A DNA stretch of 64,000 nt, taken from the sequence record KY555145.1, one strand, 5' to 3'. Position 1 is the first letter of the stretch. Every line of letters starts with the position of its first letter. The notes under the pieces are model-generated. The model saw only the letters and a list, made by a program, of their open reading frames with translations, was not told the DNA's origin and did not search any database. Shown piece by piece: positions 282 through 63,669 of the stretch. The position numbers and the translations under genes were made by a program.

Positions 282-295
282 GCGGCCTCCTTCTG

Positions 296-52623: not shown

Positions 52624-52820
52624 TTAGGGTTAACGCCGGCCGCCGAGCCCTGGGGCGATTTACCACCGCAGCGTTAACCTAACGCCTGTTAACCTATCGG
52701 TTGTTAAGGTTAACGCCCCGTTAGGGTTAACGCCCCGTTAGGGTTAACGCCCCTTAACCCTGCGCCCGTTAAGGTTAACGCGCCCCGGCCCCGGCCCAGG
52801 CCGCCGGCGTTAACCTTAAC
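52624..52820. repeat. GTTAAC cluster including the 17-bp tandem unit GGTTAACGCCCCGTTAG
   Basis: 8 GTTAAC sites; 17-mer at 52708, 52725 and partially at 52742. Confidence 0.85.
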
Positions 52821-52842
52821 CGCCAGACCCCCGCGCCCAGGC

Positions 52843-52878
52843 CATACCCGGTAGGGCCTGACGGCCCTACCGGGTATG
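52843..52878. repeat. perfect 16-bp hairpin
   Basis: CATACCCGGTAGGGCC-TGAC-GGCCCTACCGGGTATG. Confidence 0.9.
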
Positions 52879-52940
52879 ACTCCGCCCCGGCCGGGGCCAG
52901 GGACTCGCGCGGCGAGCCCGGCGCTGATTTGCGCCCCGCG

Positions 52941-53000
52941 TTTACGGTTTGTTAACGTCTGGCCTCTAGGGTCGCCCTTGTCCCGGCGCGATCCCGCGCC
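52941..53000 (+). promoter_or_regulatory. CtrA-box promoter with GATCCC-loop hairpin
   Basis: TTTA-CGGTTTG-TTAA-11-TAGGGT; GGCGC-GATCCC-GCGCC. Confidence 0.75.
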
Positions 53001-53019
53001 ATGCAAGGAGCCGCCCGCC

Positions 53020-53205
53020 ATGATCCCCGACTCGATCATGAACCCCCGCGACCATTTCCACCGCCTGCGCGAGGAAACCGCCCGCGCTCTGGTCGAGGCC
53101 TTCGCCGAAACCGACCCCGGCGAGGATTACCGCGCCGAAGAGAAGGCCGGCGCGTGGGTTGTCGCCTATTACGACGAGTCCGGCGCTTTCGTCGCCTATC
53201 TCTAG
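53020..53205 (+). CDS. small hypothetical protein (MIPDSIM...)
   Basis: AAGGAG RBS. Confidence 0.75.
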   Translation: MIPDSIMNPRDHFHRLREETARALVEAFAETDPGEDYRAEEKAGAWVVAYYDESGAFVAYL

Positions 53206-53228
53206 CCGCCTTCGCCCCTGGCGCCGCG

Positions 53229-53260
53229 TTAACGGTTTGTTAACATGTTGGCGCCAGGGT
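53229..53260 (+). promoter_or_regulatory. CtrA-box promoter
   Basis: TTAA-CGGTTTG-TTAAC-10-CAGGGT. Confidence 0.75.
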
Positions 53261-53303
53261 CGCCCTTGCCCGGCGCCGCCGCGCGCCTTCGGAGAAAAGC
53301 CCC

Positions 53304-54107
53304 ATGCTCTACACCCCCGCCGCTCGCCGCCTTCGCGCCTATCGCGAAACCGCCGCGAAGAACGCCGAAATTCACGCCCGCCCGCATATGGCCGGCAACG
53401 TCGCCGGCTATAACGAATCGGTTTGGCCGACGACGGCGCTAGGCGTCGCCGCCAAGGCCGGCGCCTTCAAGCGCCCCGAAACCGCCGGCAACTGGTCGGA
53501 AGATCGCAAGGCCTATCACGCCCCCGCGTGGCCGGCCGGCTGGCGCGTGCTGGGCACGGCCGAAGAGGTCTGCCGCAAGGAAGGATCGCGCCGGGTGGAA
53601 CATTCGGGATGGTACACGACGCCCGACGACTACAGCGCCACCCTTTCGGGCTATGTGCTGCAAATCCCCGCCCGCGACGGGGTCGCCCAATACGTCGCCG
53701 GGGTCGCCCATAGCGAGTTTGACAGGGTCACCGTCTACCCCTCGCGCCGTTTCGACAACCCGCTAGACGCGGCGAGCGCCGCCGACCAAATCGCCGAACG
53801 CGACGCCGAAGAGGAACGCGAATATCAAAGCGCGTGGCAAGCGGGCGTGCGCTTCGCCGAACTGGGCGCCGAGGTCAAGGAGGCCCGCGCCGAAGCCCTG
53901 GCGATCCTTGGCGAGCGCCGCAAGGTCAAGGGGCTGGAAACCCCCGCCTTGTGCGGCGCGATCCGGGCGCAAGTCGAGTCCTTGCTGGAGAAGATCGAAG
54001 AGGCCCGCGCCAAGCGCGACGCCCTGGCGCAAGGCAATGACCCCGGCCTCATGTTCTACCCCTCGCCGCGTCTGGTCGCGGCGTTCAATGAGGGGGCCGC
54101 GTCGTGA
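53304..54107 (+). CDS. hypothetical protein
   Basis: CTTCGGAG RBS; 267 aa. Confidence 0.8.
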   Translation: MLYTPAARRLRAYRETAAKNAEIHARPHMAGNVAGYNESVWPTTALGVAAKAGAFKRPETAGNWSEDRKAYHAPAWPAGWRVLGTAEEVCRKEGSRRVEHSGWYTTPDDYSATLSGYVLQIPARDGVAQYVAGVAHSEFDRVTVYPSRRFDNPLDAASAADQIAERDAEEEREYQSAWQAGVRFAELGAEVKEARAEALAILGERRKVKGLETPALCGAIRAQVESLLEKIEEARAKRDALAQGNDPGLMFYPSPRLVAAFNEGAAS

Positions 54108-54313
54108 GGGTCGCCCGCGATAGCTTCGCCGTGTTCTGGTCGCGTCCTGGCCAGAAATGGGGGTTTCACGCCGACATGAAACGGGCGCTTTACCCGACCC
54201 CCAAAGCCGCCGCCGACGCCTTCCGCGTCATGTTCCCGCGTGACGTGGTTCGGAGCGTCCGCGACGCTTCCGGCCGCTTCCTCGCCTTCAAGGAGTCCGC
54301 CCCGTGCGCCTGA
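54104..54313 (+). CDS. hypothetical protein
   Basis: GTGA overlap; GAGGG upstream. Confidence 0.65.
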   Translation: MRVARDSFAVFWSRPGQKWGFHADMKRALYPTPKAAADAFRVMFPRDVVRSVRDASGRFLAFKESAPCA

Positions 54314-54585
54314 TCAGCTACAACGTCAACGGAACCGGTTTCAAGGGCGGCTCTGCCCCGCCCGCCCCATGCCCTGGCCTCGCCGGTCACGCCGACGACG
54401 CGGGGCTATGGGTTCCCGACCGTGAGACGGTCGCCGCGCTTCTCCCCCGGCGCTGGCGCCACGCCTTCGCCCGCGCGGCGTTTTGGTATGACGCCCGCGA
54501 CAACAAAAAGCCTTGCCGCGCCGACCTCTACGACGCGCGCGGCCGGTACCTGACTCAGGTCTGGGCGCATCCGGTTTTCGCCTGA
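54304..54585 (+). CDS. hypothetical protein
   Basis: GTG after AAGGAG. Confidence 0.7.
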   Translation: MRLISYNVNGTGFKGGSAPPAPCPGLAGHADDAGLWVPDRETVAALLPRRWRHAFARAAFWYDARDNKKPCRADLYDARGRYLTQVWAHPVFA

Positions 54586-54591
54586 CCAGAC

Positions 54592-54617
54592 GCCCCGGAA
54601 AATCTTCCGGGGCATTT
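54592..54617 (+). terminator. probable terminator abutting a CtrA box
   Basis: GCCCCGGAA-AATC-TTCCGGGGC-ATTT. Confidence 0.6.
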
Positions 54618-54674
54618 ACCTTTTGTTAAGGAATGGCCTCTAGGTTAGCCCTTGCCGCCGGGCAATCCCGCCCG
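54615..54674 (+). promoter_or_regulatory. CtrA-box promoter with AATCCC-loop hairpin
   Basis: TTTA-CCTTTTG-TTAA-11-TAGGTT; CGGGC-AATCCC-GCCCG. Confidence 0.75.
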
Positions 54675-54694
54675 CCGCTTCGGAGTTTCGGCCC

Positions 54695-55213
54695 ATGCCT
54701 CAATTCGTTCTGGACACGTCGGGCCAAGTCGCCCCGCCCGCTTCGGCCAAGCTTTGGCCCTATCCCCTCGCTTGGGATCAACTGAGCCCCTTCGCGCAAG
54801 GCTATATCGAGGCCCTGTTTTTCACCGAATCGTCGCTGGCCTATAATCGCGCCGAATGGTTCGGCGCCGAGTGTCAAGAGGCCTTGGAGGAAGGCACGTC
54901 GGGCGGGAACATTCCGGGCGACGTCGGGTTTTCCGACCTCGCGCCCGACACCCTCAACCGCATCTTGAACGATTGCGCCCGCTTCCAACGCGAGCACGCC
55001 GACACCCTGGCCAAGGCCTATAACCACGGGGGCGACGCGGGCGACTATGACGAAACCGCCGCCGGCCGTGATTACTGGTACACCCGCAACGGCCATGGCG
55101 TCGGGTTCTGGGATCGCGGCCTAGGCGAGATTGGCGAGGCCCTGGCCAGCGCCGCCCGCTACAGCGAACAAAACGCCTCTTTTGAAGAGGACGGAAAAGT
55201 CTACCTCTCTTAA
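54695..55213 (+). CDS. conserved phage hypothetical protein (TRNGHG.GFWDR motif)
   Basis: CTTCGGAG RBS; AGRDYWYTRNGHGVGFWDRG. Confidence 0.8.
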   Translation: MPQFVLDTSGQVAPPASAKLWPYPLAWDQLSPFAQGYIEALFFTESSLAYNRAEWFGAECQEALEEGTSGGNIPGDVGFSDLAPDTLNRILNDCARFQREHADTLAKAYNHGGDAGDYDETAAGRDYWYTRNGHGVGFWDRGLGEIGEALASAARYSEQNASFEEDGKVYLS

Positions 55214-55273
55214 CCTTTTGTTAAGACTTGTCCTCTAGGTTTGACTTCGCCGCCGGGCAATCCCGCCCGGCGG
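55210..55273 (+). promoter_or_regulatory. CtrA-box promoter with AATCCC-loop hairpin
   Basis: TTAA-CCTTTTG-TTAA-11-TAGGTT; CCGCCGGGC-AATCCC-GCCCGGCGG. Confidence 0.8.
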
Positions 55274-55296
55274 TCCTCTTCTCAGGATCGCCCCTT

Positions 55297-56349
55297 ATGA
55301 CCTCTCATTCCATGGTTGCGCACCGTTGGGCGCAGGACGACGAGAACGGCCGCACCGCGCGCGGCTTCAACATGTATTTCGAGCGCTACGGACGCGGCGC
55401 CGACCGCGTCAACGTGATTTTTTCCTACGGGACTCACTTCCCGGCCGCCGCCTTCGTGACCGACGCGCACGGCCGCCGCGTGGTCCTCTACACGACGCGC
55501 CGCCGGAGCGTTTCGACCGCGAAACACCTTTCGCATATCCGCTACGCTATCCCGTCGGGCGTGCCGGTGTTTTCCGTGCCGAACGTGTCGCGGATGCACA
55601 AGCCGGGCGGCGCGGGCGACTTCCACGGGGACAACCTGCGCGCCTATATCGAGAGCGCCGCCGGCCTCGCCGAAAAGGCCAAGCGCGCCCGCGTCAACGG
55701 CCCTTGGCTGCTTAGCCAAGCCCGCGACCAACTCGCCGAAGCGCAACGCTACGCCGACGCCTTCAAGGTCAAGGGCTTCAAGGTCCCGGCCTTGGAAGAC
55801 GTCGCCGGCCAATGGGCGAAGATGACGGCCGCCAAGGCGCGGGCCGAAGCCAAGGCCCGCAAGGAAGCCGAAAAGCGCGCCCGCGAAGCCCGCGAAGCCG
55901 AACGGCTCGCCGACGCCGAAGCCTTCGCCGCGTGGATGCGCGGCGAGCGCCAGAGCGCCCCGTTTAGCTACCGGGTGCGCGATGACGGGACCGTCTATCT
56001 TCGCCGCTTCCGGGGCGTGGTCCGCGACCTGCGCAGCCAAGAGCGCGACGGCTCGCGCGTCGATGAACTGCAAACCTCGCAAGGCGCGGCCGTGCCGTGG
56101 GAACACGCGGTCAAGGCCTTCCGGTTCATCAAGCTTTGCCGCGAACGCGGCGAGAGCTTCCACCGCAACGGCCGGGTGATTCGCGTCGGACACTTCCAAG
56201 TTGACGCGATCAGCCCGAACGGGGACATGACGGCCGGTTGCCACCGGTTCGCGTGGGATGAAATCGAACGCATCGCCAGGGCCGAAGGGGTTTTCGACCT
56301 CCCCGCCGACGCTGGCGCCGTCGAAACCCGGCAAGCCGAACCGGCCTAA
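55297..56349 (+). CDS. 350-aa hypothetical protein (MTSHSMV...)
   Basis: ATG after AGGATCG. Confidence 0.8.
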   Translation: MTSHSMVAHRWAQDDENGRTARGFNMYFERYGRGADRVNVIFSYGTHFPAAAFVTDAHGRRVVLYTTRRRSVSTAKHLSHIRYAIPSGVPVFSVPNVSRMHKPGGAGDFHGDNLRAYIESAAGLAEKAKRARVNGPWLLSQARDQLAEAQRYADAFKVKGFKVPALEDVAGQWAKMTAAKARAEAKARKEAEKRAREAREAERLADAEAFAAWMRGERQSAPFSYRVRDDGTVYLRRFRGVVRDLRSQERDGSRVDELQTSQGAAVPWEHAVKAFRFIKLCRERGESFHRNGRVIRVGHFQVDAISPNGDMTAGCHRFAWDEIERIARAEGVFDLPADAGAVETRQAEPA

Positions 56350-56366
56350 GCCTCCCCGCCCCTCTC

Positions 56367-56393
56367 GCGCCCCGGCTCCCCGCCGGGGCGTTT
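56367..56393 (+). terminator. rho-independent terminator
   Basis: CGCCCGGC-TCCCC-GCCGGGGCG-TTTT. Confidence 0.6.
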
Positions 56394-56404
56394 TCGTGTA
56401 CGCG

Positions 56405-56469
56405 GTAACCTTTTGTTAACTTCTGGCTTCTAGGGTGACTTTCGCCGCCGGGCAATCCCGCCCGCCGGC
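56405..56469 (+). promoter_or_regulatory. CtrA-box promoter with AATCCC-loop hairpin
   Basis: GTAA-CCTTTTG-TTAA-11-TAGGGT; GCCG-C-CGGGC-AATCCC-GCCCG-C-CGGC. Confidence 0.75.
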
Positions 56470-56484
56470 CAAGGATCGCAGACT

Positions 56485-56784
56485 ATGAATCTTTTCGTTG
56501 TCGCCATTGACCCCGCCCTCATCCCTTCGGCCGCCGGCTTCGTGGTCGCCTCCCCCTACGGGTGCGGCAAGTGGCGCGCGTGCGTCGGGAGCGAGGCGGA
56601 CATGATCGCGCTTCGCGACAAGATGCGCCGCGCGCACCCGGCCCCGGAAGGCTACAGCGTCCAGCCCCTGGCGTCGTTCCTGGCCTATCTGGAGACGGTC
56701 GGGCAAAGCCCCTACGACCAGTTTCGCGCCCGCGACGCCGCCGCCCGCATCCTTGACACCCTGACAACGCACCTCGCCGCCTAG
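56485..56784 (+). CDS. hypothetical protein
   Basis: ATG after AAGGATCG. Confidence 0.75.
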   Translation: MNLFVVAIDPALIPSAAGFVVASPYGCGKWRACVGSEADMIALRDKMRRAHPAPEGYSVQPLASFLAYLETVGQSPYDQFRARDAAARILDTLTTHLAA

Positions 56785-56790
56785 TCCCGC

Positions 56791-56820
56791 CGCCCCCGGC
56801 CGCGCGCCGGGGGCGCTTTT
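56791..56820 (+). terminator. terminator-like hairpin
   Basis: CGCCCCCGGC-CGCGC-GCCGGGGGCG-CTTTT. Confidence 0.65.
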
Positions 56821-56841
56821 CCCTCGAAAGGATCGCCGACC

Positions 56842-57150
56842 ATGACAACCCGTCTTATCGCCGTGCGCGGCCCGACCGCCGCCGAACTCGCCGACCCGTC
56901 CAGCCGCGCGGGCGGCGCCGAAGTCGTTTTCGAGCGGCGCGACCGCGAAGGCCGCACGCGCCTTGTGTTCGCCGCGACCTGCTACGGCTCATATCAGCAA
57001 TGGGGCGAAACCCGCGACGTGCTCGCCGACAACGTCGAGGCGGTCACGCTCTGGGCCGAAGGCATGGCGGCCGTTGCCGCCCTCATCGACGAGAGCGACG
57101 ACGACGAGGGCGACGACGCCCCGGCCGAAGATGACGACGGGGAGGCGTGA
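56842..57150 (+). CDS. hypothetical protein with acidic tail
   Basis: ATG after AAGGATCG. Confidence 0.75.
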   Translation: MTTRLIAVRGPTAAELADPSSRAGGAEVVFERRDREGRTRLVFAATCYGSYQQWGETRDVLADNVEAVTLWAEGMAAVAALIDESDDDEGDDAPAEDDDGEA

Positions 57151-57153
57151 GCC

Positions 57154-57573
57154 ATGCGCACAACCAAGGCTCAACGCTTCGCCGCCATCGCCTTTGACGC
57201 CCTGGCCAAGGCCCTAAGCGAGCCGCGCCAAGCCGTCGCCCGCGTGACCAAATGGGAGGGCGCGGGCCATAGCTTCGCCAACCTGCAACGCGATTATGAG
57301 CGGTACGGCCCCGGCGCCCGCTCATGGTTCGGCCGGGCTGAAATGCGCTTCTTTGGGACGCGCCTAGAGGCCGCGCCGCTGGATTTCCCGGCGCTGGGCT
57401 GCACCCTCTTTCTGACCTCCGAAACCCCGCCCGGCGCCGGCCGGGTCTGGACCCTTCGCGCCTATGTCTGGGCTTCGGCCGATATCACCACGCTAACCCA
57501 TGGCGACGAAACCGACGCGGCGACCGCGCAAGCGGCCTTTGACCTGCTTTGGCGGGTCCTTTCGCAGCGGTAA
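57154..57573 (+). CDS. conserved phage hypothetical protein (WF...MRFFGTR...FLTSE motif)
   Basis: GGGAGG RBS. Confidence 0.75.
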   Translation: MRTTKAQRFAAIAFDALAKALSEPRQAVARVTKWEGAGHSFANLQRDYERYGPGARSWFGRAEMRFFGTRLEAAPLDFPALGCTLFLTSETPPGAGRVWTLRAYVWASADITTLTHGDETDAATAQAAFDLLWRVLSQR

Positions 57574-57633
57574 CCTTTTGTTAACTTCTGCCCGCTAGGG
57601 TCTTCTTGCGGCCGGGCAATCCCGCCCGGCCGC
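57570..57633 (+). promoter_or_regulatory. CtrA-box promoter with AATCCC-loop hairpin
   Basis: GTAA-CCTTTTG-TTAA-11-TAGGGT; perfect GCGGCCGGGC-AATCCC-GCCCGGCCGC. Confidence 0.8.
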
Positions 57634-57649
57634 TCAAGGATTGGATCGC

Positions 57650-57922
57650 ATGACCCGCGCTCAAGCCCTCGCCGACATGAACGCCCTTCCCGGTATCATC
57701 GCCTCCTTTGAGCGCGAGACGGGTGAATATCGCGTCACCCTGCGCTTTGGCCTGCTCCCCATGGGGCGCGGCGCCCAAGAGTGGATGCACGCGCGCCGCG
57801 AAGCCGTCGCCAGCTACAGCGACGACAAGGCCGACGCCCTGGCCACCGCCCGCGACATGTCCGCCCGCTGGGAGGCGATGAGCGCCGAAGAGCGTTCGCG
57901 CCTCTATCACAACCCCGCCTAA
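57650..57922 (+). CDS. hypothetical protein (MTRAQ...)
   Basis: ATG after AAGGATTGGATCG. Confidence 0.75.
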   Translation: MTRAQALADMNALPGIIASFERETGEYRVTLRFGLLPMGRGAQEWMHARREAVASYSDDKADALATARDMSARWEAMSAEERSRLYHNPA

Positions 57923-57987
57923 AGCCCCCGCGCCGCCCTGGCCTTCGCCGGGGCGGCTCCCTCAACCCCTCGCAAGGATCGCACCCC

Positions 57988-58272
57988 ATGACCGCCCGTA
58001 AGCCCCTGACCAAGGAACAAAAGGCCCGCCGCCGCGCGACCCGTCGCGCCGCCCGCCTCAACTGGTCGGATGAGCGCCGCGCCCGCGAATTCGAGCGTCA
58101 AGCCCGCTTCTTCCTGATGATCGCCACCCGCGCCCAAGGCGCCGGCCAAGGCCGGGAAGCCGCCCGCCTCGCCACGGCCGCACAACGCAAGGTGACTAGC
58201 TGGCGCATGGCGCAAGCCTGCGCCCGAATTAACGCCCTGGCCGCGCATCCTTGGGCGGGGGTCGCCGCCTGA
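57988..58272 (+). CDS. Arg/Ala-rich basic protein (MTARKPL...), copy A
   Basis: ATG after AAGGATCG. Confidence 0.75.
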   Translation: MTARKPLTKEQKARRRATRRAARLNWSDERRAREFERQARFFLMIATRAQGAGQGREAARLATAAQRKVTSWRMAQACARINALAAHPWAGVAA

Positions 58273-58454
58273 TGGCCCGCCGCGTCCGCTACATGCCGTC
58301 CGAAGCTCTGGACCTCGCCGACGCGCTCGGCGAGGGGCTGGACCTCGTCAAGGCGATGAGCGAGGCCCGCCGCGCGGGCGCGCCGATCGCCGACACCCTC
58401 GCCGCCCTCGAAGACTGGGCTTTAACCGCCGTCAACCTCATCGAAGAGGACTAA
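58272..58454 (+). CDS. small hypothetical protein (MARRVRY...), copy A
   Basis: TGATG overlap. Confidence 0.7.
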   Translation: MARRVRYMPSEALDLADALGEGLDLVKAMSEARRAGAPIADTLAALEDWALTAVNLIEED

Positions 58455-58459
58455 ACCCG

Positions 58460-58642
58460 ATGACGCACCCTCACGCCCTGGCGCTGATCGCCCTCGCGGA
58501 AAAGGTGTTGCCGCTTACCCGGCTGCACCCGCTGGACCAACGCGCCGCCGCCGTCGATCTAATCGGCGACCTCTACGCCCTCGCCGACTCCATCGACGCC
58601 GACCCGCAACCCGCCGCCTTGGCGCAACCGAAGGCCGCCTAA
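58460..58642 (+). CDS. small hypothetical protein (MTHPHA...), copy A
   Basis: AGAGGA RBS. Confidence 0.75.
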   Translation: MTHPHALALIALAEKVLPLTRLHPLDQRAAAVDLIGDLYALADSIDADPQPAALAQPKAA

Positions 58643-58645
58643 GCC

Positions 58646-59230
58646 ATGACCGCACGCCCGACCCCCGCCGCCCTTCTCGCCGCGTCCGACACCCTGGCGA
58701 ATTATCTTCGCGGTTCCGCCTCGCATCGCGCCTATCCGGCGCCGGTTCTCGCCGCCCTCGAAGTGCTCGAAGATGAGGGCGCAACCGGCGCCTTTGAGCG
58801 AGGCGACCCGGACTCCGAGCCGACCCCCGGCGCCCTGAAGCTCCTAGCCGGCATGGTTTCGGCCGCCGCGTCCAATGAGGCCGAAATCATCGCCGCGAAC
58901 CTGACCAAATCGGCGACACTGGCCGAAGCCGTGGCCAGTTATGACGCGATGAGCGATCTTGCCGCATGGCTGGAATACCAAGGCGAGGACGCCGCCGCCG
59001 ACGAAATGCGCGGCTATTATCTCCCTCTGGAGGGCGAAGTGAACGCCGCCCGCGCGACGGGGGAAGCCCTCGCCGCCGCGATCAAGCCCGACCCGGACGC
59101 CATGTCACGTCTAACGCAATCGCTCGCCGAATTCGTCGGACCCTCGCGCGCCCTGCAAATCGTTGGCGAACTCCCCGCCGCCCTCAATGACGCGGACCTG
59201 ATTCTAGTCCGCAAGCCCAAGGAGGCTTAG
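58646..59230 (+). CDS. hypothetical protein (MTARPT...), allele A
   Basis: Distantly similar to 61191..61781. Confidence 0.75.
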   Translation: MTARPTPAALLAASDTLANYLRGSASHRAYPAPVLAALEVLEDEGATGAFERGDPDSEPTPGALKLLAGMVSAAASNEAEIIAANLTKSATLAEAVASYDAMSDLAAWLEYQGEDAAADEMRGYYLPLEGEVNAARATGEALAAAIKPDPDAMSRLTQSLAEFVGPSRALQIVGELPAALNDADLILVRKPKEA

Positions 59231-59233
59231 ACC

Positions 59234-59722
59234 ATGCCCCGCGACGTTTCCCGCTTCGCCACCCCTGAAAAGATCATCGGGGGTTACCTCATGACCGCCC
59301 AACGCGACGGGGCCATGACTGAGGCCGCCGACGTCATCGCCACCCTAGAGGCGGCCGGCTATGTGATCGCCCGCCGCCGCGACGTCTACACCGACTCCGG
59401 GGTCAAGTTGGGCGACGCCCTGGCGGCGCTTTACGACGCCGTTCCTAACTACGCCGTGCGCTCGCAACGGCTCGCCGACGCCCTGACCCCGGCGCGGGAT
59501 TACGTCTATCAACCCCGGTTCCGGGTTAAGTTGGACGCCGCCCCCGGCGCGCGCCTGACTGACTGCGAAACCGGCGCGTGCGTCTATTTCCAGCCCGGTG
59601 ACGACGCCGAAGCCTTCCGCGCCCTCTTCGCCCCCTGGCTTCGCGATAACGACGAGACGGGCGACGGTAAGGCCCTGGCCTCGATGATGAACGCCACGGC
59701 CGAAGAATACTTTTCCGGCTAA
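59234..59722 (+). CDS. hypothetical protein (MPRDVS...), copy A
   Basis: AAGGAGG RBS; homologous to 61786. Confidence 0.8.
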   Translation: MPRDVSRFATPEKIIGGYLMTAQRDGAMTEAADVIATLEAAGYVIARRRDVYTDSGVKLGDALAALYDAVPNYAVRSQRLADALTPARDYVYQPRFRVKLDAAPGARLTDCETGACVYFQPGDDAEAFRALFAPWLRDNDETGDGKALASMMNATAEEYFSG

Positions 59723-59817
59723 GTCATCATTCCTACCGTCTATGACTTGTCACCGGCCGAACTCTTGCCCGGTGACAGTCTGGGCAAGTAAAGCTCACTC
59801 TGGATTTTATGACTTAG
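59719..59817. other. structured intergenic element with reversed GTCAY-N14-RTGAC motif and nested inverted repeats
   Basis: CTAAGTCAT (59719) / ATGACTTAG (59809); TGTCACCGG...CCGGTGACA; repeated at 62361-62459. Confidence 0.6.
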
Positions 59818-59903
59818 CGCAAAGGATTGAAATTGCTCGAAAAATTCCTAGAAGCTCACAAAGTCGTTTTCTGGCTGCTCTTGCTGGCCTGTTTGTGGCG
59901 CTT

Positions 59904-59969
59904 TTAACGGTTTGTTAACCCCTGGCCCTCTAGGGTCGAATTCCCGGCGCGGCAATCCCGCCGCCCCGG
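59904..59969 (+). promoter_or_regulatory. CtrA-box promoter with AATCCC-loop hairpin (covariant stem)
   Basis: TTAA-CGGTTTG-TTAA-12-TAGGGT; CCGG-C-GCGGC-AATCCC-GCCGC-C-CCGG. Confidence 0.8.
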
Positions 59970-59990
59970 CCTTCCTTCGGAGCTTCCAAA

Positions 59991-60437
59991 ATGTTCGCTT
60001 CCGTGACCCTTCCCGCCCATGACGCCCAAGGCCTGAGCCTCGAAACCGTCCACATGGTTTTCGCCCGCGAACTGGCGCAACATTTCGACCACGTGACTTC
60101 CGCCCCCGTGGTCGAAAGCTGGACCGACGAGGAAACCGGCGCCGACCACGCGCAAGCCGCCGTCTGCTTCACCGTTTCGGCGACCCCGGCCGCGTGGGAA
60201 GCCAAGGGCGGGCGGCTCGCGCGCCGGCTGGAAAACCTCGCCGCGCGCTATGCCGCCGACTGCGACGCCCCGGCCCTGACTGTCACCCATTGCGACGGGC
60301 AAACGGTCTATGTCGGCGCTCTGGAAGCCCTGGCGCGCCCCGCTCCGGTGCAAGGCCCGACCCGCGACGCGGACCCGGCTTTCCTCCCCCGCCAGCGTGA
60401 GGACAAGGCCGCCCGCTTCGATCGCCTGACCGCCTAG
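59991..60437 (+). CDS. hypothetical protein (MFASVTL...), copy A
   Basis: CTTCGGAG RBS. Confidence 0.8.
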   Translation: MFASVTLPAHDAQGLSLETVHMVFARELAQHFDHVTSAPVVESWTDEETGADHAQAAVCFTVSATPAAWEAKGGRLARRLENLAARYAADCDAPALTVTHCDGQTVYVGALEALARPAPVQGPTRDADPAFLPRQREDKAARFDRLTA

Positions 60438-60453
60438 CCCCTGGCCTTCCCCT

Positions 60454-60487
60454 AGCGCACCGCCCCTAGAAAGGCGGTGCGCTTTTC
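60454..60487 (+). terminator. rho-independent terminator (duplicated at 63096-63129)
   Basis: AGCGCACCGCC-CCTAGAAA-GGCGGTGCGCT-TTT. Confidence 0.8.
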
Positions 60488-60495
60488 TGTGTCTG

Positions 60496-60528
60496 TTTAC
60501 TTGTTGTTAAGGAATAGCCTGCTAGTGT
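60496..60528 (+). promoter_or_regulatory. CtrA-box promoter, leader removed at the duplication junction
   Basis: TTTA-CTTGTTG-TTAA-12-TAGTGT, then directly TTG of the next gene. Confidence 0.7.
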
Positions 60529-60532
60529 CTCC

Positions 60533-60817
60533 TTGACCGCCCGTAAGCCCCTGACCAAGGAACAAAAGGCCCGCCGCCGCGCGACCCGTCGCGCCGCCCG
60601 CCTCAACTGGTCGGATGAGCGCCGCGCCCGCGAATTCGAGCGTCAAGCCCGCTTCTTCCTAATGATCGCCACCCGCGCCCAAGGCGCCGGCCAAGGCCAG
60701 GAAGCCGCCCGCCTCGCCACGGTCGCACAACGCAAGGTGACAAACTGGCGCATGGCGCAGGCCTGCGCCCGGATTAACGCCCTGGCCGTGCATCCTTGGG
60801 CGGGGGTCGCCTCCTAA
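60533..60817 (+). CDS. Arg/Ala-rich basic protein, copy B (TTG start, no RBS)
   Basis: Near-identical to 57988..58272; ATG and SD replaced at the junction. Confidence 0.55.
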   Translation: MTARKPLTKEQKARRRATRRAARLNWSDERRAREFERQARFFLMIATRAQGAGQGQEAARLATVAQRKVTNWRMAQACARINALAVHPWAGVAS

Positions 60818-60999
60818 TGGCCCGCCGCGTCCGCTACATGCCGTCCGAAGCTCTGGACCTCGCCGACGCGCTCGGCGAGGGGCTGGACCTCGTTAAGGCG
60901 ATGAGCGAGGCCCGCCGCGCGGGCGCGCCTATCGCCGACACCCTCGCCGCCCTCGAAGACTGGGCTTTAACCGCCGTCAACCTCATAGAAGAGGACTAA
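60817..60999 (+). CDS. small hypothetical protein (MARRVRY...), copy B
   Basis: TAATG overlap; identical protein. Confidence 0.7.
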   Translation: MARRVRYMPSEALDLADALGEGLDLVKAMSEARRAGAPIADTLAALEDWALTAVNLIEED

Positions 61000-61004
61000 A
61001 CCCA

Positions 61005-61187
61005 ATGACGCACCCTCACGCCCTGGCGCTGATCGCCCTCGCCGAAAAGGTGTTGCCGCTTACCCGGCTGCACCCGCTCGACCAACGCGCCGCCGCCGTC
61101 GACCTAATCGGCGACCTCTACGCCCTCGCCGACTCCATTGACGCCACCCCGCAAGCCGCCGCCCTGGCGCAACCGAAGGCCGCCTAA
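61005..61187 (+). CDS. small hypothetical protein (MTHPHA...), copy B
   Basis: Near-identical to 58460. Confidence 0.75.
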   Translation: MTHPHALALIALAEKVLPLTRLHPLDQRAAAVDLIGDLYALADSIDATPQAAALAQPKAA

Positions 61188-61190
61188 GCC

Positions 61191-61781
61191 ATGAACCCGA
61201 ACCGCTACCGCCTCGCGCCCCGCGACCGCTTCAGCCGCGAGCTTGCCGAAACGCTCTATCAGGCGGCCGAAGCCGTCGCCCGCGTGATTCCGCTAGTGCC
61301 GGAGTCCGTCCCCGATGAGCGCCGCGCGCTGGGCAAGGTCCGCGCCGACCTGCTAACCCATAGCGCCGGCGCCCTTGTTCCCAAGCCGCCGGCCGCCGTG
61401 CTCGCAACCCTCGTTTGGGTTGTCGAGATGGCGCAAGATCGCGCGACCAACGCCGATTTCAACACCGCCCAAGAGGGACTCGACGAACACGAGTCCCTAG
61501 CCTTTGTCGCCGACTGGCTGGAAGCCGAAGGCCAGGACGTGACGCCGATTCGCAACGCGCAACCGTCCGCCGACGCCCTGGCCGAACTCGCCGCCCGTCG
61601 CGACGCCGAACAAGAGGCGCTAGACGCCTTGGAGGCCGCCGCCCTGGCCGAAGCGCCGGGCGACGTGATCACCGAAGCCTTGCGCCCCTATCTGGGCGCC
61701 ACCCTGGCCGAAAACCACGCCGACGACGTGCTAGACGCCCTCACGCGCGCCGGCTTCCAAATCACCCGCAAGGAGGCTTAA
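61191..61781 (+). CDS. hypothetical protein (MNPNRY...), allele B
   Basis: Same slot as 58646; shares the A(D/A)WLE..G.D segment and KEA end. Confidence 0.75.
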   Translation: MNPNRYRLAPRDRFSRELAETLYQAAEAVARVIPLVPESVPDERRALGKVRADLLTHSAGALVPKPPAAVLATLVWVVEMAQDRATNADFNTAQEGLDEHESLAFVADWLEAEGQDVTPIRNAQPSADALAELAARRDAEQEALDALEAAALAEAPGDVITEALRPYLGATLAENHADDVLDALTRAGFQITRKEA

Positions 61782-61785
61782 GACC

Positions 61786-62364
61786 ATGTCCCGCGCCGTT
61801 TCCACCTTCGCCACCCCTGAAAAGCTCATCGGGGGTTACCTCATGTCGGCGGCCCGTCACGGGGCCATGACCGAAGCCGCCGAAGTCATCGCCACCCTAG
61901 AGGCGGCCGGCTATGTGATCGCCCGCCGCCGCGACGTCTTCACCGATGAGGGCGAGAAGCTGGGCGACCTGTTGGCGGCGCTTTATGACGCCGTCCCGAA
62001 CTACGCCGTAAGATCGCAGCGCCTCGCCGACGCCCTCAAGCCGGCGCGAGACTACGTCTATCAGCCCCGGTTCCGGGTCAAGCTGGACGCCGCGCCCGGC
62101 GCGCGCCTGACCGACTGCGACACGGGCGCAACGGTCTATTTCCAGCCGGGCGACGACGCCGACGCCTTCCGGGCCGAATTCGCCCCGTGGGTTCACGACG
62201 CCAATGTGACGGCCGAAGGCGCGGCCCTGGCCTCGATGATGAACCCGACGGCCGAAGAGTATTTCAGCGCCAGCGGGGAAGATGACGACTTGCCCGGCGC
62301 GCTTTCCGCCTTCGATTCCGCCGGCTCCGGCCAAAGACTGGGCTACGTTCGCCCGCCTCGCTAA
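61786..62364 (+). CDS. hypothetical protein (MSRAVS...), copy B with C-terminal extension
   Basis: AAGGAGG RBS; homologue of 59234 plus 30 aa. Confidence 0.8.
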   Translation: MSRAVSTFATPEKLIGGYLMSAARHGAMTEAAEVIATLEAAGYVIARRRDVFTDEGEKLGDLLAALYDAVPNYAVRSQRLADALKPARDYVYQPRFRVKLDAAPGARLTDCDTGATVYFQPGDDADAFRAEFAPWVHDANVTAEGAALASMMNPTAEEYFSASGEDDDLPGALSAFDSAGSGQRLGYVRPPR

Positions 62365-62545
62365 GTCATCATTCCTACCGTCTATGACTTGTCACCGGCC
62401 GAAGTCTTACCCGGTGACAGTCTGGGCAAGTAAAGCTCACTCTGGATTTTATGACTTAGCGCAAAGGATTGAAATTGCTCGAAAAATTCCTAGAAGCTCA
62501 CAAAGTCGTTTTCTGGCTGCTCTTGCTGGCCTGTTTGTGGCGCTT

Positions 62546-62611
62546 TTAACGGTTTGTTAACCCCTGGCCCTCTAGGGTCGAATTCCCGGCGCGGCAATCC
62601 CGCCGCCCCGG
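62546..62611 (+). promoter_or_regulatory. CtrA-box promoter with AATCCC-loop hairpin (duplicate of 59904)
   Basis: Offset 2642. Confidence 0.8.
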
Positions 62612-62632
62612 CCTTCCTTCGGAGCTTCCAAA

Positions 62633-63079
62633 ATGTTCGCTTCCGTGACCCTTCCCGCCCATGACGCCCAAGGCCTGAGCCTCGAAACCGTCCACATGGT
62701 TTTCGCCCGCGAACTGGCGCAACATTTCGACCACGTGACTTCCGCCCCCGTGGTCGAAAGCTGGACCGACGAGGAAACCGGCGCCGACCACGCGCAAGCC
62801 GCCGTCTGCTTCACCGTTTCGGCGACCCCGGCCGCGTGGGAAGCCAAGGGCGGCCGGCTCGCGCGCCGGCTGGAAAACCTCGCCGCGCGCTATGCCGCCG
62901 ACTGCGACGCCCCGGCCCTGACTGTCACCCATTGCGACGGGCAAACGGTCTATGTCGGCGCTCTGGAAGCCCTGGCGCGCCCCGCCCCGGTGCAAGGCCC
63001 GACCCGCGCGGCGGACCCGGCTTTCCTCCCCCGCCAGCGCGAGGACAAGGCCGCCCGCTTCGATCGCCTGACCGCCTAG
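62633..63079 (+). CDS. hypothetical protein (MFASVTL...), copy B
   Basis: One residue differs from 59991. Confidence 0.8.
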   Translation: MFASVTLPAHDAQGLSLETVHMVFARELAQHFDHVTSAPVVESWTDEETGADHAQAAVCFTVSATPAAWEAKGGRLARRLENLAARYAADCDAPALTVTHCDGQTVYVGALEALARPAPVQGPTRAADPAFLPRQREDKAARFDRLTA

Positions 63080-63137
63080 CCCCTGGCCTTCCCCCTAGCG
63101 CACCGCCCCTAGAAAGGCGGTGCGCTTTTCTGTGTCT

Positions 63138-63203
63138 GTTTACTTGTTGTTAAGGAATAGCCTGCTAGTGTCTCCTTGTCGGCGGACGCATCCCGCGCCC
63201 GCC
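63138..63203 (+). promoter_or_regulatory. CtrA-box promoter with ATCCC-loop hairpin
   Basis: TTTA-CTTGTTG-TTAA-12-TAGTGT; GGCGG-A-CGC-ATCCC-GCG-C-CCGCC. Confidence 0.75.
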
Positions 63204-63222: not shown

Positions 63223-63615
63223 ATGGCCCGCCCCTCTGACCTGCTCAACGTCAACGCCGCCCGCGTCCTGGCTTGCCTTGAGCCTATCGCCGCCGCCGCT
63301 AAGACGGCCCCGGCCGCCGACCGCGCCGCCCTTTCCTACCTGCTCGACGCTGGCGAGTATGTCGCCGCGTGGCGCCGCAACCTCACGGAAACCGACCGCC
63401 GCAAGGCCTATGGCGCGGCCTGCGCCGCCGAAGCCCTGGCGCTCGCCAACGCCTATCAGCCCGCCACCCTGCAAGGCGGCGCCGTCCGCCGCGCTCTGGG
63501 CGCCTATGCCGCCGCCCTAAAGGTCCTGCTAGACGGGGAGCCGGTCAAGGCGGTGCGCGCCGCCGAAGGCGCGGCGCTTTCGGTCCGCGCCCGCTACGCC
63601 AACACCCGCCTTTAA
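63223..63615 (+). CDS. Ala-rich hypothetical protein
   Basis: ATG after TGGATCG. Confidence 0.75.
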   Translation: MARPSDLLNVNAARVLACLEPIAAAAKTAPAADRAALSYLLDAGEYVAAWRRNLTETDRRKAYGAACAAEALALANAYQPATLQGGAVRRALGAYAAALKVLLDGEPVKAVRAAEGAALSVRARYANTRL

Positions 63616-63643
63616 CCTCTTGTTAACACCCCCCGGCTATGGT
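63612..63643 (+). promoter_or_regulatory. CtrA-box promoter
   Basis: TTAA-CCTCTTG-TTAA-11-TATGGT; inverted repeat CCCCCCGG/TCGGGGGG around the -10. Confidence 0.75.
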
Positions 63644-63669
63644 CGGGGGGTCGCAAGGAGACACCCGAC

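What the first reader, a model, noticed from the sequence alone, without database searches (positions are those of the whole stretch)
52985..63203. Covarying 5'-leader hairpin with an invariant ATCCC loop behind eight CtrA promoters
Seen: about 6-17 nt after the -10 lie GGCGC-GATCCC-GCGCC (52985), CGGGC-AATCCC-GCCCG (54659, 56449), CCGCCGGGC-AATCCC-GCCCGGCGG (55250), GCGGCCGGGC-AATCCC-GCCCGGCCGC (57608), GCGGC-AATCCC-GCCGC (59949, 62591) and CGC-ATCCC-GCG (63187). Stem sequences differ but pairing is preserved (CGGGC/GCCCG versus GCGGC/GCCGC versus GGCGC/GCGCC). Several share a single mismatch at the same position, and the loop is fixed. Inference: a protein-binding RNA element analogous to lambda boxB. 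These units are separated by strong terminators, so antitermination is plausible; translational control or 5' protection are alternatives. I know of no description of this motif. With the CtrA box it may define a two-layer regulatory system for the first-expressed genes.
Basis: partly seen in the sequence, partly recalled or inferred. Interest (0 to 1): 0.82.

Follow-up and report, generated by a model that had tools for sequence, protein, structure and literature searches.

The report
Leader hairpin behind phage CtrA promoters
Most of the first-expressed genes of this Caulobacter phage begin with the same small, evolutionarily maintained RNA stem-loop right at the predicted start of the message; it has not been described before, most likely protects or organises the early messages, and is probably not a lambda-style antitermination signal.

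Summary
The window is the right end of Caulobacter phage Ccr29, a phiCbK-like phage. The finding lies in its 13-kb terminal repeat. Each starts 6-12 nt after a TAGGGT/TAGTGT -10 that follows a CtrA box.

The CtrA promoters are already published (Mascolo 2022). The hairpin is not mentioned there or in the phiCbK genome paper, and Rfam has no match.

Pairing is under selection. In 25 distinct copies from 9 phages, 87% of cells pair against 69% after shuffling, and 8 of 10 pairs show double-sided changes. Orthologous genes carry unrelated hairpins at the same place. ATCC sits in the sense-strand loop 38 times, against one GGAT.

The loop is fixed only within this window. Across three phage genera it is AAUCCC or AUCCC most often, but also AUCGG, CGG, ACUUCC and ACCCC. 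Related Brevundimonas phages and CcrBL9 have CtrA promoters without the hairpin.

The best reading is a 5'-terminal stem-loop carried with the promoter as one cassette, acting as a stabiliser or insulator of early mRNAs. A loop-binding factor remains possible. The boxB/N antitermination analogy fails its testable features. I rate this a real new RNA motif of moderate interest, with function untested.

The parts
52941..52972 (+). CtrA box TTTACGGTTTGTTAAC plus -10 TAGGGT, promoter of the gp004-like ORF (53020-53205)
52985..53000 (+). Leader hairpin GGCGC-GAUCCC-GCGCC. Alternative fold: 6-bp stem with AUCC loop.
   Evidence: (29.1 bits)
54615..54646 (+). CtrA box plus -10 TAGGTT, promoter of ORF 54695-55213
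54656..54677 (+). Leader hairpin CGcCGGGC-AAUCCC-GCCCGcCG, with a C.C mismatch at pair 6
   Evidence: (38.6 bits)
55210..55241 (+). CtrA box plus -10 TAGGTT, promoter of the gp008-like ORF 55297-56349. The box contains the stop codon of the upstream ORF.
55249..55274 (+). Leader hairpin GCCGCCGGGC-AAUCCC-GCCCGGCGGU, 10 bp, starting at the predicted +1 G
   Evidence: 42.4 bits; z -3.66
56405..56436 (+). CtrA box GTAACCTTTTGTTAAC plus -10 TAGGGT, promoter of ORF 56485-56784
56444..56469 (+). Leader hairpin GCCGcCGGGC-AAUCCC-GCCCGcCGGC, with a C.C mismatch at pair 6
   Evidence: (42.4 bits)
57570..57601 (+). CtrA box plus -10 TAGGGT, promoter of the gp012-like ORF 57650-57922 and of the downstream operon that includes the Arg-rich ORF 57988-58272
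57608..57633 (+). Leader hairpin GCGGCCGGGC-AAUCCC-GCCCGGCCGC, a perfect 10 bp. It is identical in 6 phages (Ccr29, phiCbK, Karma, Swift, Rogue, BL10) although the flanks have diverged; Ccr5 differs in the outer stem.
   Evidence: 43.4 bits; z -2.95
59904..59936 (+). CtrA box TTAACGGTTTGTTAAC plus -10 TAGGGT, promoter of the gp018-like ORF 59991-60437. The phiCbK orthologue was shown to be CtrA-activated.
59944..59969 (+). Leader hairpin CCGGcGCGGC-AAUCCC-GCCGCcCCGG
   Evidence: (38.8 bits)
62546..62611 (+). Duplicate copy of the gp018 promoter and hairpin (hairpin 62586-62611)
63139..63171 (+). CtrA box TTTACTTGTTGTTAAG plus -10 TAGTGT, promoter of the gp019-like ORF 63223-63615
63181..63203 (+). 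Leader hairpin GGCGGaCGC-AUCCC-GCGcCCGCC, with a 5-nt loop and an A.C mismatch. In BL10 and BL57 the stem is one pair shorter on both arms and has no mismatch.
53229..53287 (+). CtrA promoter of the gp005-like operon, with hairpin GGCGC-CGCCGC-GCGCC (53272-53287). It has the same stem as 52985 but no ATCCC loop.
60497..60535 (+). Copy of the 63139 promoter fused at a duplication junction directly to the TTG codon of the second Arg-rich ORF. No leader hairpin.
63612..63650 (+). CtrA promoter of gp020. Its inverted repeat CCCCCCG/CGGGGGG brackets the -10 instead of following it.

Best explanation
Each site encodes a G+C-rich RNA stem-loop at the extreme 5' end of an early phage mRNA.

**Shown**
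- The hairpin is physically coupled to a CtrA-box/-10 promoter, is strand-specific, and keeps its pairing through compensatory changes.
- Where a hairpin is present, its place is kept even when its sequence is replaced.
- It belongs to a promoter-leader cassette that stands in front of unrelated small early ORFs in the terminal repeats of Shapirovirus, Poindextervirus and Colossusvirus phages.

**Inferred**
- Host RNA polymerase activated by CtrA~P starts at the first purine 7-10 nt after the -10. These are G 52980, 54654, 55249, 56444, 57608, 59946 and 63178.
- The stem would then begin at +1 to +6, leaving 0-5 unpaired nucleotides, and end 1-10 nt before the Shine-Dalgarno.

**Most likely function**
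- A 5'-terminal stem-loop of this kind hinders 5'-end-dependent decay (pyrophosphate removal and RNase E entry).
- It also locks up the G+C-rich leader so that the ribosome site stays single-stranded.
- The result would be stable, well-translated messages in the first minutes in a swarmer cell.
- The preference for an A-N(1-3)-CC loop suggests some further sequence-specific constraint that is not identified.

My confidence that this is a selected RNA-level 5' leader hairpin is about 0.85. My confidence in the stabiliser/insulator function is about 0.45.
For: - **Position.**
  - Of 83 distinct CtrA-promoter leaders from 10 phages, 70 have a hairpin of at least 5 bp starting no more than 13 nt after the -10.
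  - The mode is 6-10 nt.
  - In one search's set of 85 leaders, 84% have a hairpin scoring at least as high as five G-C pairs within 40 nt, against 31% of random windows from the same repeats.
- **Covariation.**
  - 86.8% of cells pair, against 69.0% after shuffling (0 of 500 shuffles reach the observed value).
  - 8 of 10 pairs show changes on both sides.
  - Sliding the 3' partner gives 34-54% paired.
- **Orthologue replacement.**
  - The gp012 gene carries GCGGCCGGGC-AAUCCC-GCCCGGCCGC in six phages, a close variant in Ccr5, GCGGGCGGGGG-AUCG-CCCCCGCCC in BL57 and GGCGGGA-CGG-UCCCGCC in Colossus and CcrPW.
  - The gp004 gene has five different hairpins.
- **Sense-strand signal.**
  - ATCC occurs in 38 loops and GGAT in one.
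  - CcrPW 16022 differs from Colossus 14848 by two transitions that give U.G and G.U. These pair only in the sense RNA.
- **Conservation.** Hairpin arms and loop are 0.79-0.82 identical between clades, against 0.69-0.74 for the neighbouring spacers.
- **Folding.** The centroid folds of the leaders show the hairpin with the Shine-Dalgarno unpaired.
- **Promoter geometry.** Most CtrA-induced promoters have the CtrA box at -35 (PMC11264516).
- **Promoter activity.** phiCbK gp005 and gp018 promoter fragments are CtrA-activated in uninfected cells (PMC9437464).
- **Known effect of the structure.** 5'-terminal stem-loops stabilise bacterial mRNAs, and pyrophosphohydrolases need unpaired 5' nucleotides (review PMC3997798).
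- **Loop diversity.** A role that does not need one particular loop fits the family-wide variety of loops.
Against: - No transcription start site has been mapped, so the 5'-terminal position is inferred from promoter geometry.
- A pure stabiliser does not explain two things. AUCCC or AAUCCC recurs in three genera on different stems, and one 26-nt hairpin is identical in six phages whose flanks have diverged.
- Related Brevundimonas phage Marchewka and CcrBL9 run CtrA promoters of the same geometry without such a hairpin, so it is not needed for CtrA-dependent expression as such.
- Folding-energy z-scores are unremarkable for five of seven leaders.
- In the published reporter assay, the construct without the ATCCC loop (gp005) gave the higher activity. 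That comparison was not designed to test the hairpin.
Confidence: 0.45

Rival explanations
1. The hairpin is an RNA operator. A phage early protein or a host protein recognises the A-N-UCC(C) loop on the G+C stem. It thereby controls all CtrA-driven early messages together after transcription, for example by translational shut-off next to the Shine-Dalgarno, or by selective protection while host mRNA is degraded.
For: - The loop is strongly biased: 56 of 70 loops start with A, 46 of 70 end in CC, and 38 of 70 contain AUCC.
- AUCCC recurs on different stems in three genera.
- One hairpin sequence is identical in six phages with diverged flanks.
- A recurrent C.C mismatch lies 5-6 pairs from the loop.
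- The 3' arm ends 0-10 nt from the Shine-Dalgarno, and abuts CUGGAG in Colossus and CcrPW.
- The motif is absent from bacterial genomes at the pattern tested, which would fit a phage-encoded partner.
Against: - Several unrelated loop classes (AUCGG, CGG, CUGGAAA, UCGC) occupy the same place.
- The loop is no better conserved than the arms.
- No candidate binder has any recognisable RNA-binding domain.
- Identity across phages could come from exchange of cassettes rather than from selection.
Confidence: 0.25
2. This is a lambda N/boxB-like or put-like processive antitermination signal. The nascent hairpin, alone or with the Arg-rich protein, modifies RNA polymerase so that it reads through the terminators between units.
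For: - Strong terminators exist at 54592, 56367, 60454 and 63097.
- An internal terminator lies at 56791 inside the 56405 unit.
- An early 94-aa protein has an Arg-rich N-terminal helix followed by Trp.
Against: - The loop is pyrimidine-rich and 5-6 nt long, unlike the purine GNRA-like boxB pentaloop.
- The only conserved block 5' of the stem (CYCYTTG) lies between the -10 and the predicted start, so no boxA is expected in the RNA.
- The hairpin is at the predicted +1 of almost every unit, including units with no terminator at their 3' end, whose stop codon sits inside the next CtrA box.
- Every terminator is followed by its own CtrA promoter, so read-through is not needed.
- PDB sequence search with the Arg-rich protein gives only one chance-level hit at E up to 10, unrelated to antitermination, and fold search gives only generic helical hairpins at E of 1 or more.
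- The gp018 leader works without phage proteins.
Confidence: 0.07
3. This is a DNA-level element. An asymmetric operator or 'stoperator'-like site (GCAATCCCGC), or an extrudable cruciform at +1 to +30, is bound by a phage or host protein to shut off or tune the early promoters.
For: - The position is fixed relative to the promoter.
- Strand asymmetry is compatible with an asymmetric DNA site.
- A second class of covarying inverted repeats brackets the -10 itself. Only its 3' arm lies downstream of the -10, so it cannot form in that promoter's own transcript.
Against: - A sequence-reading DNA protein does not explain arms that change on both sides while staying complementary.
- It does not explain replacement by unrelated hairpins at the same place.
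- It does not explain transitions that keep only sense-strand G.U pairing.
Confidence: 0.1
4. The hairpin has no function of its own. It is a G+C-rich quasi-palindrome that hitch-hikes with a promoter cassette which is duplicated and exchanged among phages (PeSL-like shuffling). Its arms are kept complementary by template-switch correction.
For: - Identical cassettes stand in front of non-homologous ORFs.
- 31% of random windows in these repeats already contain a hairpin of about five G-C pairs.
- Single-sequence z-scores are modest.
- Ccr29 shows recent rearrangement at a promoter, at 60497-60535.
Against: - Hairpins are far more frequent at this position than in the background: 84% against 31% at the lower score cut-off, and 47% against 6% at the higher one.
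- Unrelated hairpin sequences occupy the same place in orthologous leaders.
- The hairpin is better conserved than the adjacent spacers.
- The Ccr29 junction is a microhomology join, not recombination within the hairpin.
Confidence: 0.1

Closest known systems
5'-terminal stabilising stem-loops of bacterial and phage mRNAs (ompA hp1, papA; the phage T7 phi10 leader, the last from my own knowledge)
   Same: - A short stable hairpin lies at or within a few nucleotides of the predicted 5' end, upstream of the ribosome site.
- No particular loop is required.
- As in T7, the hairpin would come with the promoter, so that every transcript of the class carries it.
- References are listed in review PMC3997798.
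   Different: - The start sites here are predicted, not mapped.
- The loop is strongly biased (AUCCC or AAUCCC).
- The element is tied to a cell-cycle regulator's promoter.
- Any effect on half-life is untested.
PeSL cassettes (promoter-early stem-loop) of T4-like phages (PMC2839356, PMC4122927)
   Same: A small composite motif of early promoter plus stem-loop is repeated many times in a plastic region full of small ORFs of unknown function, and stands in front of unrelated genes.
   Different: - In PeSLs the stem-loop is a terminator paired with the promoter, and the motif is credited with mediating recombination.
- Here the hairpin lies downstream of the -10, has no U tract, and would be part of the mRNA leader.
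- The one rearrangement junction seen in the window is not inside it.
Lambda nut site (boxA + boxB) with N protein
   Same: - A small hairpin lies in early transcripts of a phage.
- An Arg-rich early protein is encoded nearby.
- Terminators are present in the region.
   Different: - The loop chemistry differs.
- No boxA is expected in the RNA.
- The hairpin sits at the predicted +1 of about ten units rather than once per early operon.
- It is also present where no terminator follows.
- Basal expression does not need phage factors.
Translational operator hairpins of phages (MS2 or PP7 coat protein operators, T4 RegA targets; from my own knowledge)
   Same: A short hairpin with a defined loop lies next to a ribosome site and could let one protein repress many early messages.
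   Different: - Those operators include the start codon or the Shine-Dalgarno, whereas this one ends 1-10 nt upstream of the Shine-Dalgarno.
- No binding protein is known.
Published CtrA-binding sites in phiCbK-like terminal repeats (Mascolo et al. 2022, PMC9437464)
   Same: These are the same promoters. gp005 and gp018 of phiCbK were shown to bind CtrA and to depend on it.
   Different: That work treats only the DNA sites. The words hairpin, stem-loop, leader and inverted repeat do not occur in it.

Membership tests
Lambda N / nut (boxA-boxB) antitermination | boxB: a 5-bp stem with a purine-rich pentaloop (GAAAA or GAAGA type) that folds like a GNRA tetraloop | tested here: not met
   Loops are AAUCCC, AUCCC or GAUCCC, pyrimidine-rich and 5-6 nt long. 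Stems are 5-11 bp.
Lambda N / nut (boxA-boxB) antitermination | A boxA sequence (CGCUCUUA type) in the RNA a few nucleotides 5' of boxB | tested here: not met
   The only conserved block 5' of the stem is CYCYTTG, directly after the -10. It lies at or before the predicted start, so mostly not in the RNA. This depends on the predicted start site.
Lambda N / nut (boxA-boxB) antitermination | An N-type protein with an arginine-rich motif that binds the hairpin | tested here: inconclusive
   - The 94-aa ORF 57988-58272 has an Arg-rich N-terminal helix.
- It has no Pfam family, belongs to a PHROG of unknown function, and gives only one chance-level, unrelated PDB sequence hit at E up to 10.
- Foldseek gives only generic helical hairpins.
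- Binding cannot be tested here.
Lambda N / nut (boxA-boxB) antitermination | Sites placed once per early operon, upstream of terminators that must be read through | tested here: not met
   The hairpin stands at the predicted +1 of 8 of 11 units, including units with no terminator. Every terminator is followed by a new CtrA promoter.
5'-terminal mRNA stabiliser stem-loop | The hairpin begins within about 0-4 unpaired nucleotides of the 5' end | tested here: inconclusive
   The stem starts 6-12 nt after the -10 hexamer. With the first purine 7-10 nt downstream as +1, 0-5 nt are unpaired. No start site has been mapped.
5'-terminal mRNA stabiliser stem-loop | Works through structure, not through a particular loop sequence | tested here: met
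   Pairing covaries. Unrelated hairpins with different loops replace each other at the same place in orthologous leaders.
5'-terminal mRNA stabiliser stem-loop | Lengthens mRNA half-life | not testable with these tools
   This needs rifampicin chase of wild-type, disrupted and restored leaders.
PeSL (promoter-early stem-loop) cassette | A composite of early promoter and stem-loop, repeated in a hyperplastic region in front of unrelated ORFs | tested here: met
   About 10 units per terminal repeat stand in front of ORFs that fall in different PHROGs of unknown function.
PeSL (promoter-early stem-loop) cassette | The stem-loop is a terminator associated with the promoter | tested here: not met
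   The hairpin lies downstream of the -10 and has no U tract. Separate terminators precede only some promoters.
PeSL (promoter-early stem-loop) cassette | Serves as the point of homologous exchange | tested here: inconclusive
   Identical hairpins with diverged flanks would fit this. The only junction seen in the window (60533) is a 2-nt microhomology join at the start region, not within the hairpin.
Any curated RNA family (Rfam 15) | A covariance-model match | tested here: not met
   No match at E of 1 or less overlaps any hairpin.

The most novel reading that the evidence does not exclude
The A-N-UCC(C) loop on its G+C stem is the operator of a dedicated RNA-binding factor, either a phage early protein such as the Arg-rich phrog_6524 product or a Caulobacter protein. 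That factor acts on all CtrA-driven early messages at once. It would give phiCbK-like phages a post-transcriptional regulon layered on the host cell-cycle regulon, for instance to shut early translation off, or to spare phage messages during host mRNA decay.
Probability: 0.25. Interest if true: 0.7.

Novelty: new variant of a known kind. Interest (0 to 1): 0.45.

Why it matters
phiCbK is the standard phage of the Caulobacter cell-cycle model. Its terminal-repeat genes are the first to be expressed, and all have unknown function. Published work stops at the finding that CtrA drives them.

A conserved RNA structure at the predicted first nucleotides of most of these messages adds a second design element that is easy to test. 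It could explain how a phage secures strong early expression in a swarmer cell. It also offers a compact promoter-plus-leader part for expression in G+C-rich alphaproteobacteria.

If the loop proves to bind a factor, the motif would define a new phage RNA-protein control system. The motif can also be added to RNA family libraries: a 30-position model separates it cleanly, at 29-45 bits for true copies. The only other hits above 22 bits are a terminator-like hairpin after gp003 in Swift (30.6 bits) and one site in CcrPW (24 bits).

Tried and rejected
- **Host or wider distribution.** Scans of 185,579 species genomes and of JGI metagenomes for TTGTTAAS-N20-45-SSSGCAATCCCGCSSS gave 13 and 14 loci. 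That is about my own rough estimate of the chance number. None has complementary arms or a CtrA box. IMG/VR returned copies of phiCbK-like phages, one coding-region chance hit (L017) and one odd family of 52-54% G+C (L013, L019, L020) that I did not pursue.
- **Loop pairing with the ribosome site.** GGAU-type sites occur only with AUCC loops, but GGAG sites are just as common with them. Internal genes without hairpins use the same AAGGAUCGC site. I found no convincing co-variation (direct reading).
- **A trans-acting small RNA kissing the loop.** GGAUUG at 59824 is complementary to CAAUCC but is not conserved in Swift, Rogue or BL10. The region looks like a small ORF.
- **CcrM site, sigma-dependent pause element, boxA.** None fits the sequences (direct reading).
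- **tRNA T-arm resemblance.** Loop length and sequence do not fit.
- **phiCbK infection RNA-seq tables (PMC10462132).** The phage sheets are not in the stored supplement, so there is no expression or 5' end information.
- **Arg-rich protein.**
  - Pfam, PHROGs, PDB sequence search, AlphaFold2 and Foldseek gave a confident helical hairpin and nothing else.
  - Its occurrence in the same 26 records as the hairpin is what any gene of this clade would show.
- **Folding energy as evidence.** Only two of seven leaders beat shuffles clearly.

Full report
**Where the window comes from.** The region 52800-60500 is 100% identical to Caulobacter phage Ccr29 (KY555145). It is 92-94% identical to phiCbK, Karma, Magneto and others, and lies inside their annotated direct terminal repeat. 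Record position 1 corresponds to about window 50709, so the window is the right end of the genome and the finding lies in the 13.3-kb terminal repeat. The large-terminase ORF (48755-51487) runs into the repeat.

**Checking the observation.**
- Direct reading shows 13 TTGTTAA boxes, all on the + strand and all between 51507 and 63626 (0.47 expected).
- Eleven of them are followed 10-11 nt later by a TA-N3-T hexamer (TAGGGT, TAGGTT, TAGTGT or TATGGT).
- GCRATCCCGC occurs 7 times against 1.44 expected, and 0 of 100 shuffles reach 7.
A C.C mismatch lies at the sixth pair in four of them, and an A.C mismatch in the last.
- The hairpins start 6-12 nt after the -10 and end 15-22 nt before the start codon.
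- Three promoters in the window lack the motif.
  - 53229 has the same GGCGC/GCGCC stem as 52985 but a CGCCGC loop.
  - 60497 is a copy of the 63139 promoter joined at a duplication junction directly to the second copy of the Arg-rich ORF.
  - At 63612 the inverted repeat brackets the -10 instead of following it.
- 62586 is the duplicate of 59944, so there are seven independent sites.

**What is already known.**
- Mascolo et al. [quoted passage not shown]
- They showed CtrA binding to the phiCbK gp005 and gp018 upstream regions, and CtrA-dependent lacZ expression of both in uninfected C. crescentus.
- The words hairpin, stem-loop, leader and inverted repeat do not occur in that paper. Hairpin, stem-loop and inverted repeat are also absent from the phiCbK genome paper PMC3556154.
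- Rfam 15 has no match on any hairpin.
- The promoters are therefore known. As far as I could search, the leader hairpin is not.

**Is it a structure under selection?** I collected terminal repeats of phiCbK, Karma, Ccr5, Swift, Rogue, CcrBL10, BL57, CcrColossus, CcrPW and CcrBL9.
- Among 83 distinct CtrA-promoter leaders, excluding CcrBL9, 70 have a hairpin of at least 5 bp starting no more than 13 nt after the -10. The mode is 6-10 nt.
- In one search's set of 85 leaders, 84% have a hairpin scoring at least as high as five G-C pairs within 40 nt, against 31% of random windows from the same repeats. At the higher score cut-off the figures are 47% and 6%.
- For 25 distinct six-nucleotide-loop copies (alignment A1, gap-free) with the 10-pair structure:
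  - 86.8% of cells pair, against 69.0% after shuffling (0 of 500 shuffles reach this);
  - 8 of 10 pairs show changes on both sides;
  - the covariation score is 0.404 against 0.133;
  - sliding the 3' partner by 1-3 columns drops pairing to 34-54%.
- The inner five pairs occur as CGGGC/GCCCG, GCGGC/GCCGC, GGCGC/GCGCC and GGCGG/CCGCC.
- Orthologues tell the same story.
  - The gp012 gene carries the identical 26-nt hairpin in Ccr29, phiCbK, Karma, Swift, Rogue and BL10. This holds although the promoter spacer, the -10 and the post-hairpin leader differ. Ccr5 carries a close variant.
  - The same gene has GCGGGCGGGGG-AUCG-CCCCCGCCC in BL57 and GGCGGGA-CGG-UCCCGCC in Colossus and CcrPW.
  - The gp004 gene has five different hairpins.
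  - The gp019 hairpin is one pair shorter on both arms, without the mismatch, in BL10 and BL57.
- Between clades, the arms and loop are 0.79-0.82 identical. The CtrA box is 0.89, the -10 is 0.87, and the adjacent spacers are 0.69-0.74.
- Single-sequence folding energies are not persuasive. Z-scores run from -0.04 to -3.7, because any 80% G+C leader folds well. In every leader the centroid fold shows the hairpin and leaves the Shine-Dalgarno unpaired.

**RNA or DNA?**
- The element is strand-specific. ATCC is in the sense-strand loop 38 times, against a single GGAT.
- The model scores the antisense of its best site at 20 bits against 43.
- CcrPW 16022 differs from Colossus 14848 by two transitions that turn C-G and G-C into U.G and G.U. 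These pair only in the sense RNA.
- A DNA-reading protein would not explain arms that change on both sides.
- I therefore read it as an RNA hairpin, with a DNA-level role kept as a minor rival. The second class of covarying repeats, which bracket the -10 itself, keeps that rival alive (also in Brevundimonas phage Marchewka).

**Where in the transcript?**
- Most CtrA-induced promoters have the CtrA box at -35 (PMC11264516).
- Here the TTAAC half-site ends 10-11 nt before the TA-N3-T hexamer.
- A pyrimidine run ending in TTG or TCG follows, and the first purine lies 7-10 nt after the hexamer.
- Taking that G as +1 (an inference), the stems begin at +1 (55249, 56444, 57608, 59946), +3 (54656), +4 (63181) or +6 (52985).
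- This is the geometry of 5'-terminal stabiliser stem-loops. Such loops hinder pyrophosphate removal and 5'-end-dependent RNase E attack (review PMC3997798 and the work it cites).

**The loop.**
- Within the window it is AAUCCC six times, GAUCCC once and AUCCC once.
- Family-wide it is not invariant. Counting all promoter units, the loops are AATCCC 32, ATCCC 15, ATCGG 10, CGG 6, ACTTCC 4, ACTCCC 3 and ACCCC 3, with singletons.
- The bias is nevertheless strong. Of 70 loops, 56 start with A and 46 end in CC.
- AUCCC sits on the GGCGC stem in Colossusvirus and on other stems in the other two genera.
- A purely structural role does not explain this bias, which is why I keep a loop-binding factor at 0.25.

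**Distribution.**
- The covariance model R1 finds nothing else in the 50 kb of the window outside the repeat.
- Across 244 kb of eleven sources, all hits above 31 bits are promoter leaders. The one non-leader hit above 25 bits is a 30.6-bit terminator-like hairpin after gp003 in Swift.
- BLAST with one unit finds 26 records, all Caulobacter phiCbK-like phages.
- Pattern scans of bacterial genomes and metagenomes give only about the number my rough estimate predicts by chance, without complementary arms.
- CcrBL9 (Bertelyvirus) and the Brevundimonas phage Marchewka have many CtrA promoters. Marchewka's have the same geometry, but the leaders are short and lack the hairpin.
- So the hairpin is a lineage-specific addition in three genera, not a requirement of CtrA-dependent transcription.

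**The antitermination idea.**
- Strong terminators lie at 54592, 56367, 60454 and 63097, each immediately followed by the next CtrA promoter. One lies inside a unit at 56791.
- Other units have no terminator at their 3' end. Their stop codon lies inside the next CtrA box (55211, 57571, 63613).
- The hairpin is present regardless.
- The loop is unlike boxB, and no boxA is expected in the RNA.
- The gp018 leader is expressed without phage proteins.
- The Arg-rich 94-aa protein (57988-58272, with a second copy at 60533-60817):
  - belongs to phrog_6524, of unknown function;
  - has no Pfam family, and only one chance-level, unrelated PDB sequence hit at E up to 10;
  - is predicted with pLDDT 86 as two long helices;
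  - matches only generic helical hairpins at E of 1 or more;
  - occurs in the same 26 records as the hairpin, with a distant relative in Colossus and CcrPW. Any gene of the repeat would show this.
- Antitermination is not excluded for the 56791 site, but nothing specific supports it.

**Verdict.**
It is a selected RNA leader hairpin, but the boxB analogy does not hold and the loop is not invariant.
- The most likely role is a 5'-terminal stabiliser or insulator carried with the CtrA promoter as one cassette.
- A loop-recognising factor is the main rival and the most interesting open possibility.
- Everything about function is inferred. The decisive steps are start-site mapping and disrupt-and-restore mutants.

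Noticed in passing
window 51560-51713: Seven GGGACCCT(GG) repeats about 24 bp apart lie just after the end of the terminase gene, near the left edge of the terminal repeat. They are conserved in phiCbK, Swift, Rogue and BL57. They may be a packaging or replication site.
   Followed up: no
window 52490-52830: There are three GTTTTGACG repeats at a 38-bp period (52493, 52531, 52569). They are followed by a dense array of GGTTAAC/TTAAC CtrA half-sites on both strands with no -10 element (52620-52830).
   Followed up: no
window 57991-60535 versus 60536-63180: This is a diverged tandem duplication in Ccr29, which explains its 13.3-kb repeat against 10.3 kb in phiCbK. The junction puts the 60497 promoter directly onto the TTG at 60533 of the second Arg-rich ORF, so that copy has no leader and no hairpin.
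   Followed up: partly
window 63629-63650; also L002 9878, L006 9339, L007 10315 and 7241, L004 6269, L052 28379 and 41289: A second class of inverted repeat brackets the -10 hexamer (CCCCCCG-gctatggt-CGGGGGG). It covaries between phages (CCTCCCG/CGGGAGG, CCCCCTG/CAGGGGG). Only its 3' arm lies downstream of the -10, so it cannot form in that promoter's own transcript. It could form in DNA or in read-through RNA.
   Followed up: partly
window 55211-55213, 57571-57573, 63613-63615: The TAA stop codons of upstream ORFs lie inside the TTAAC half-site of the next CtrA box. These units abut without any terminator.
   Followed up: no
window 59742-59918 and 62384-62560: An unannotated 58-codon ORF with a hydrophobic C-terminus lies in an unusually A+T-rich spacer conserved across the family. 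The motif AAGTCATAGAC recurs at 51929 (+), 52235 (+), 59748 (-) and 62390 (-).
   Followed up: partly
L008 5087 (+), 1891 (-), 3456 (-), 8229 (-); L049 6079 (+), 1940 (-), 3996 (-), 8943 (-); L007 2281 (-): In CcrColossus, CcrPW and BL57, some CtrA promoters drive a conserved ORF-less unit (...GGGCTCTTCGAACCGTAGGGGCGC...). In some copies it ends in a GC stem followed by TTTTT. These are candidate CtrA-driven small RNAs and are absent from this window.
   Followed up: no
L013 837-900, L019 about 250-330 (-), L020 about 8930-9010 (-): IMG/VR contigs of 52-54% G+C carry a CtrA-like box (TTAGC or TTCAC, N6, TTAAC). About 35 nt later comes GCGGC-AATCCC-GCCGC, before an ORF. The count is at chance level for the scan, but the combination is curious.
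   Followed up: partly
window 52975-53011, 57602-57644; L007 6487-6530: The pyrimidine block before the stem (CCTTG) is complementary to the CAAGG of the ribosome site after it. In BL57 the helix extends to 15 pairs and buries AAGG. In read-through transcripts this could mask the ribosome site.
   Followed up: no
window 48755-51487: The large-terminase ORF (910 aa) is annotated in phiCbK, Karma and Swift as containing an intein. It extends about 780 bp into the terminal repeat.
   Followed up: no
L004 1696-1725, L003 1674-1703, L005 1693-1722: A 12-bp G+C hairpin with a GAGCCC, CAGCCC or GCGCCC loop follows directly after the gp003 stop in Swift, Ccr5 and Rogue. It scores 21-31 bits with the leader model but is not behind a promoter. 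No counterpart was found at the corresponding place in the window.
   Followed up: partly
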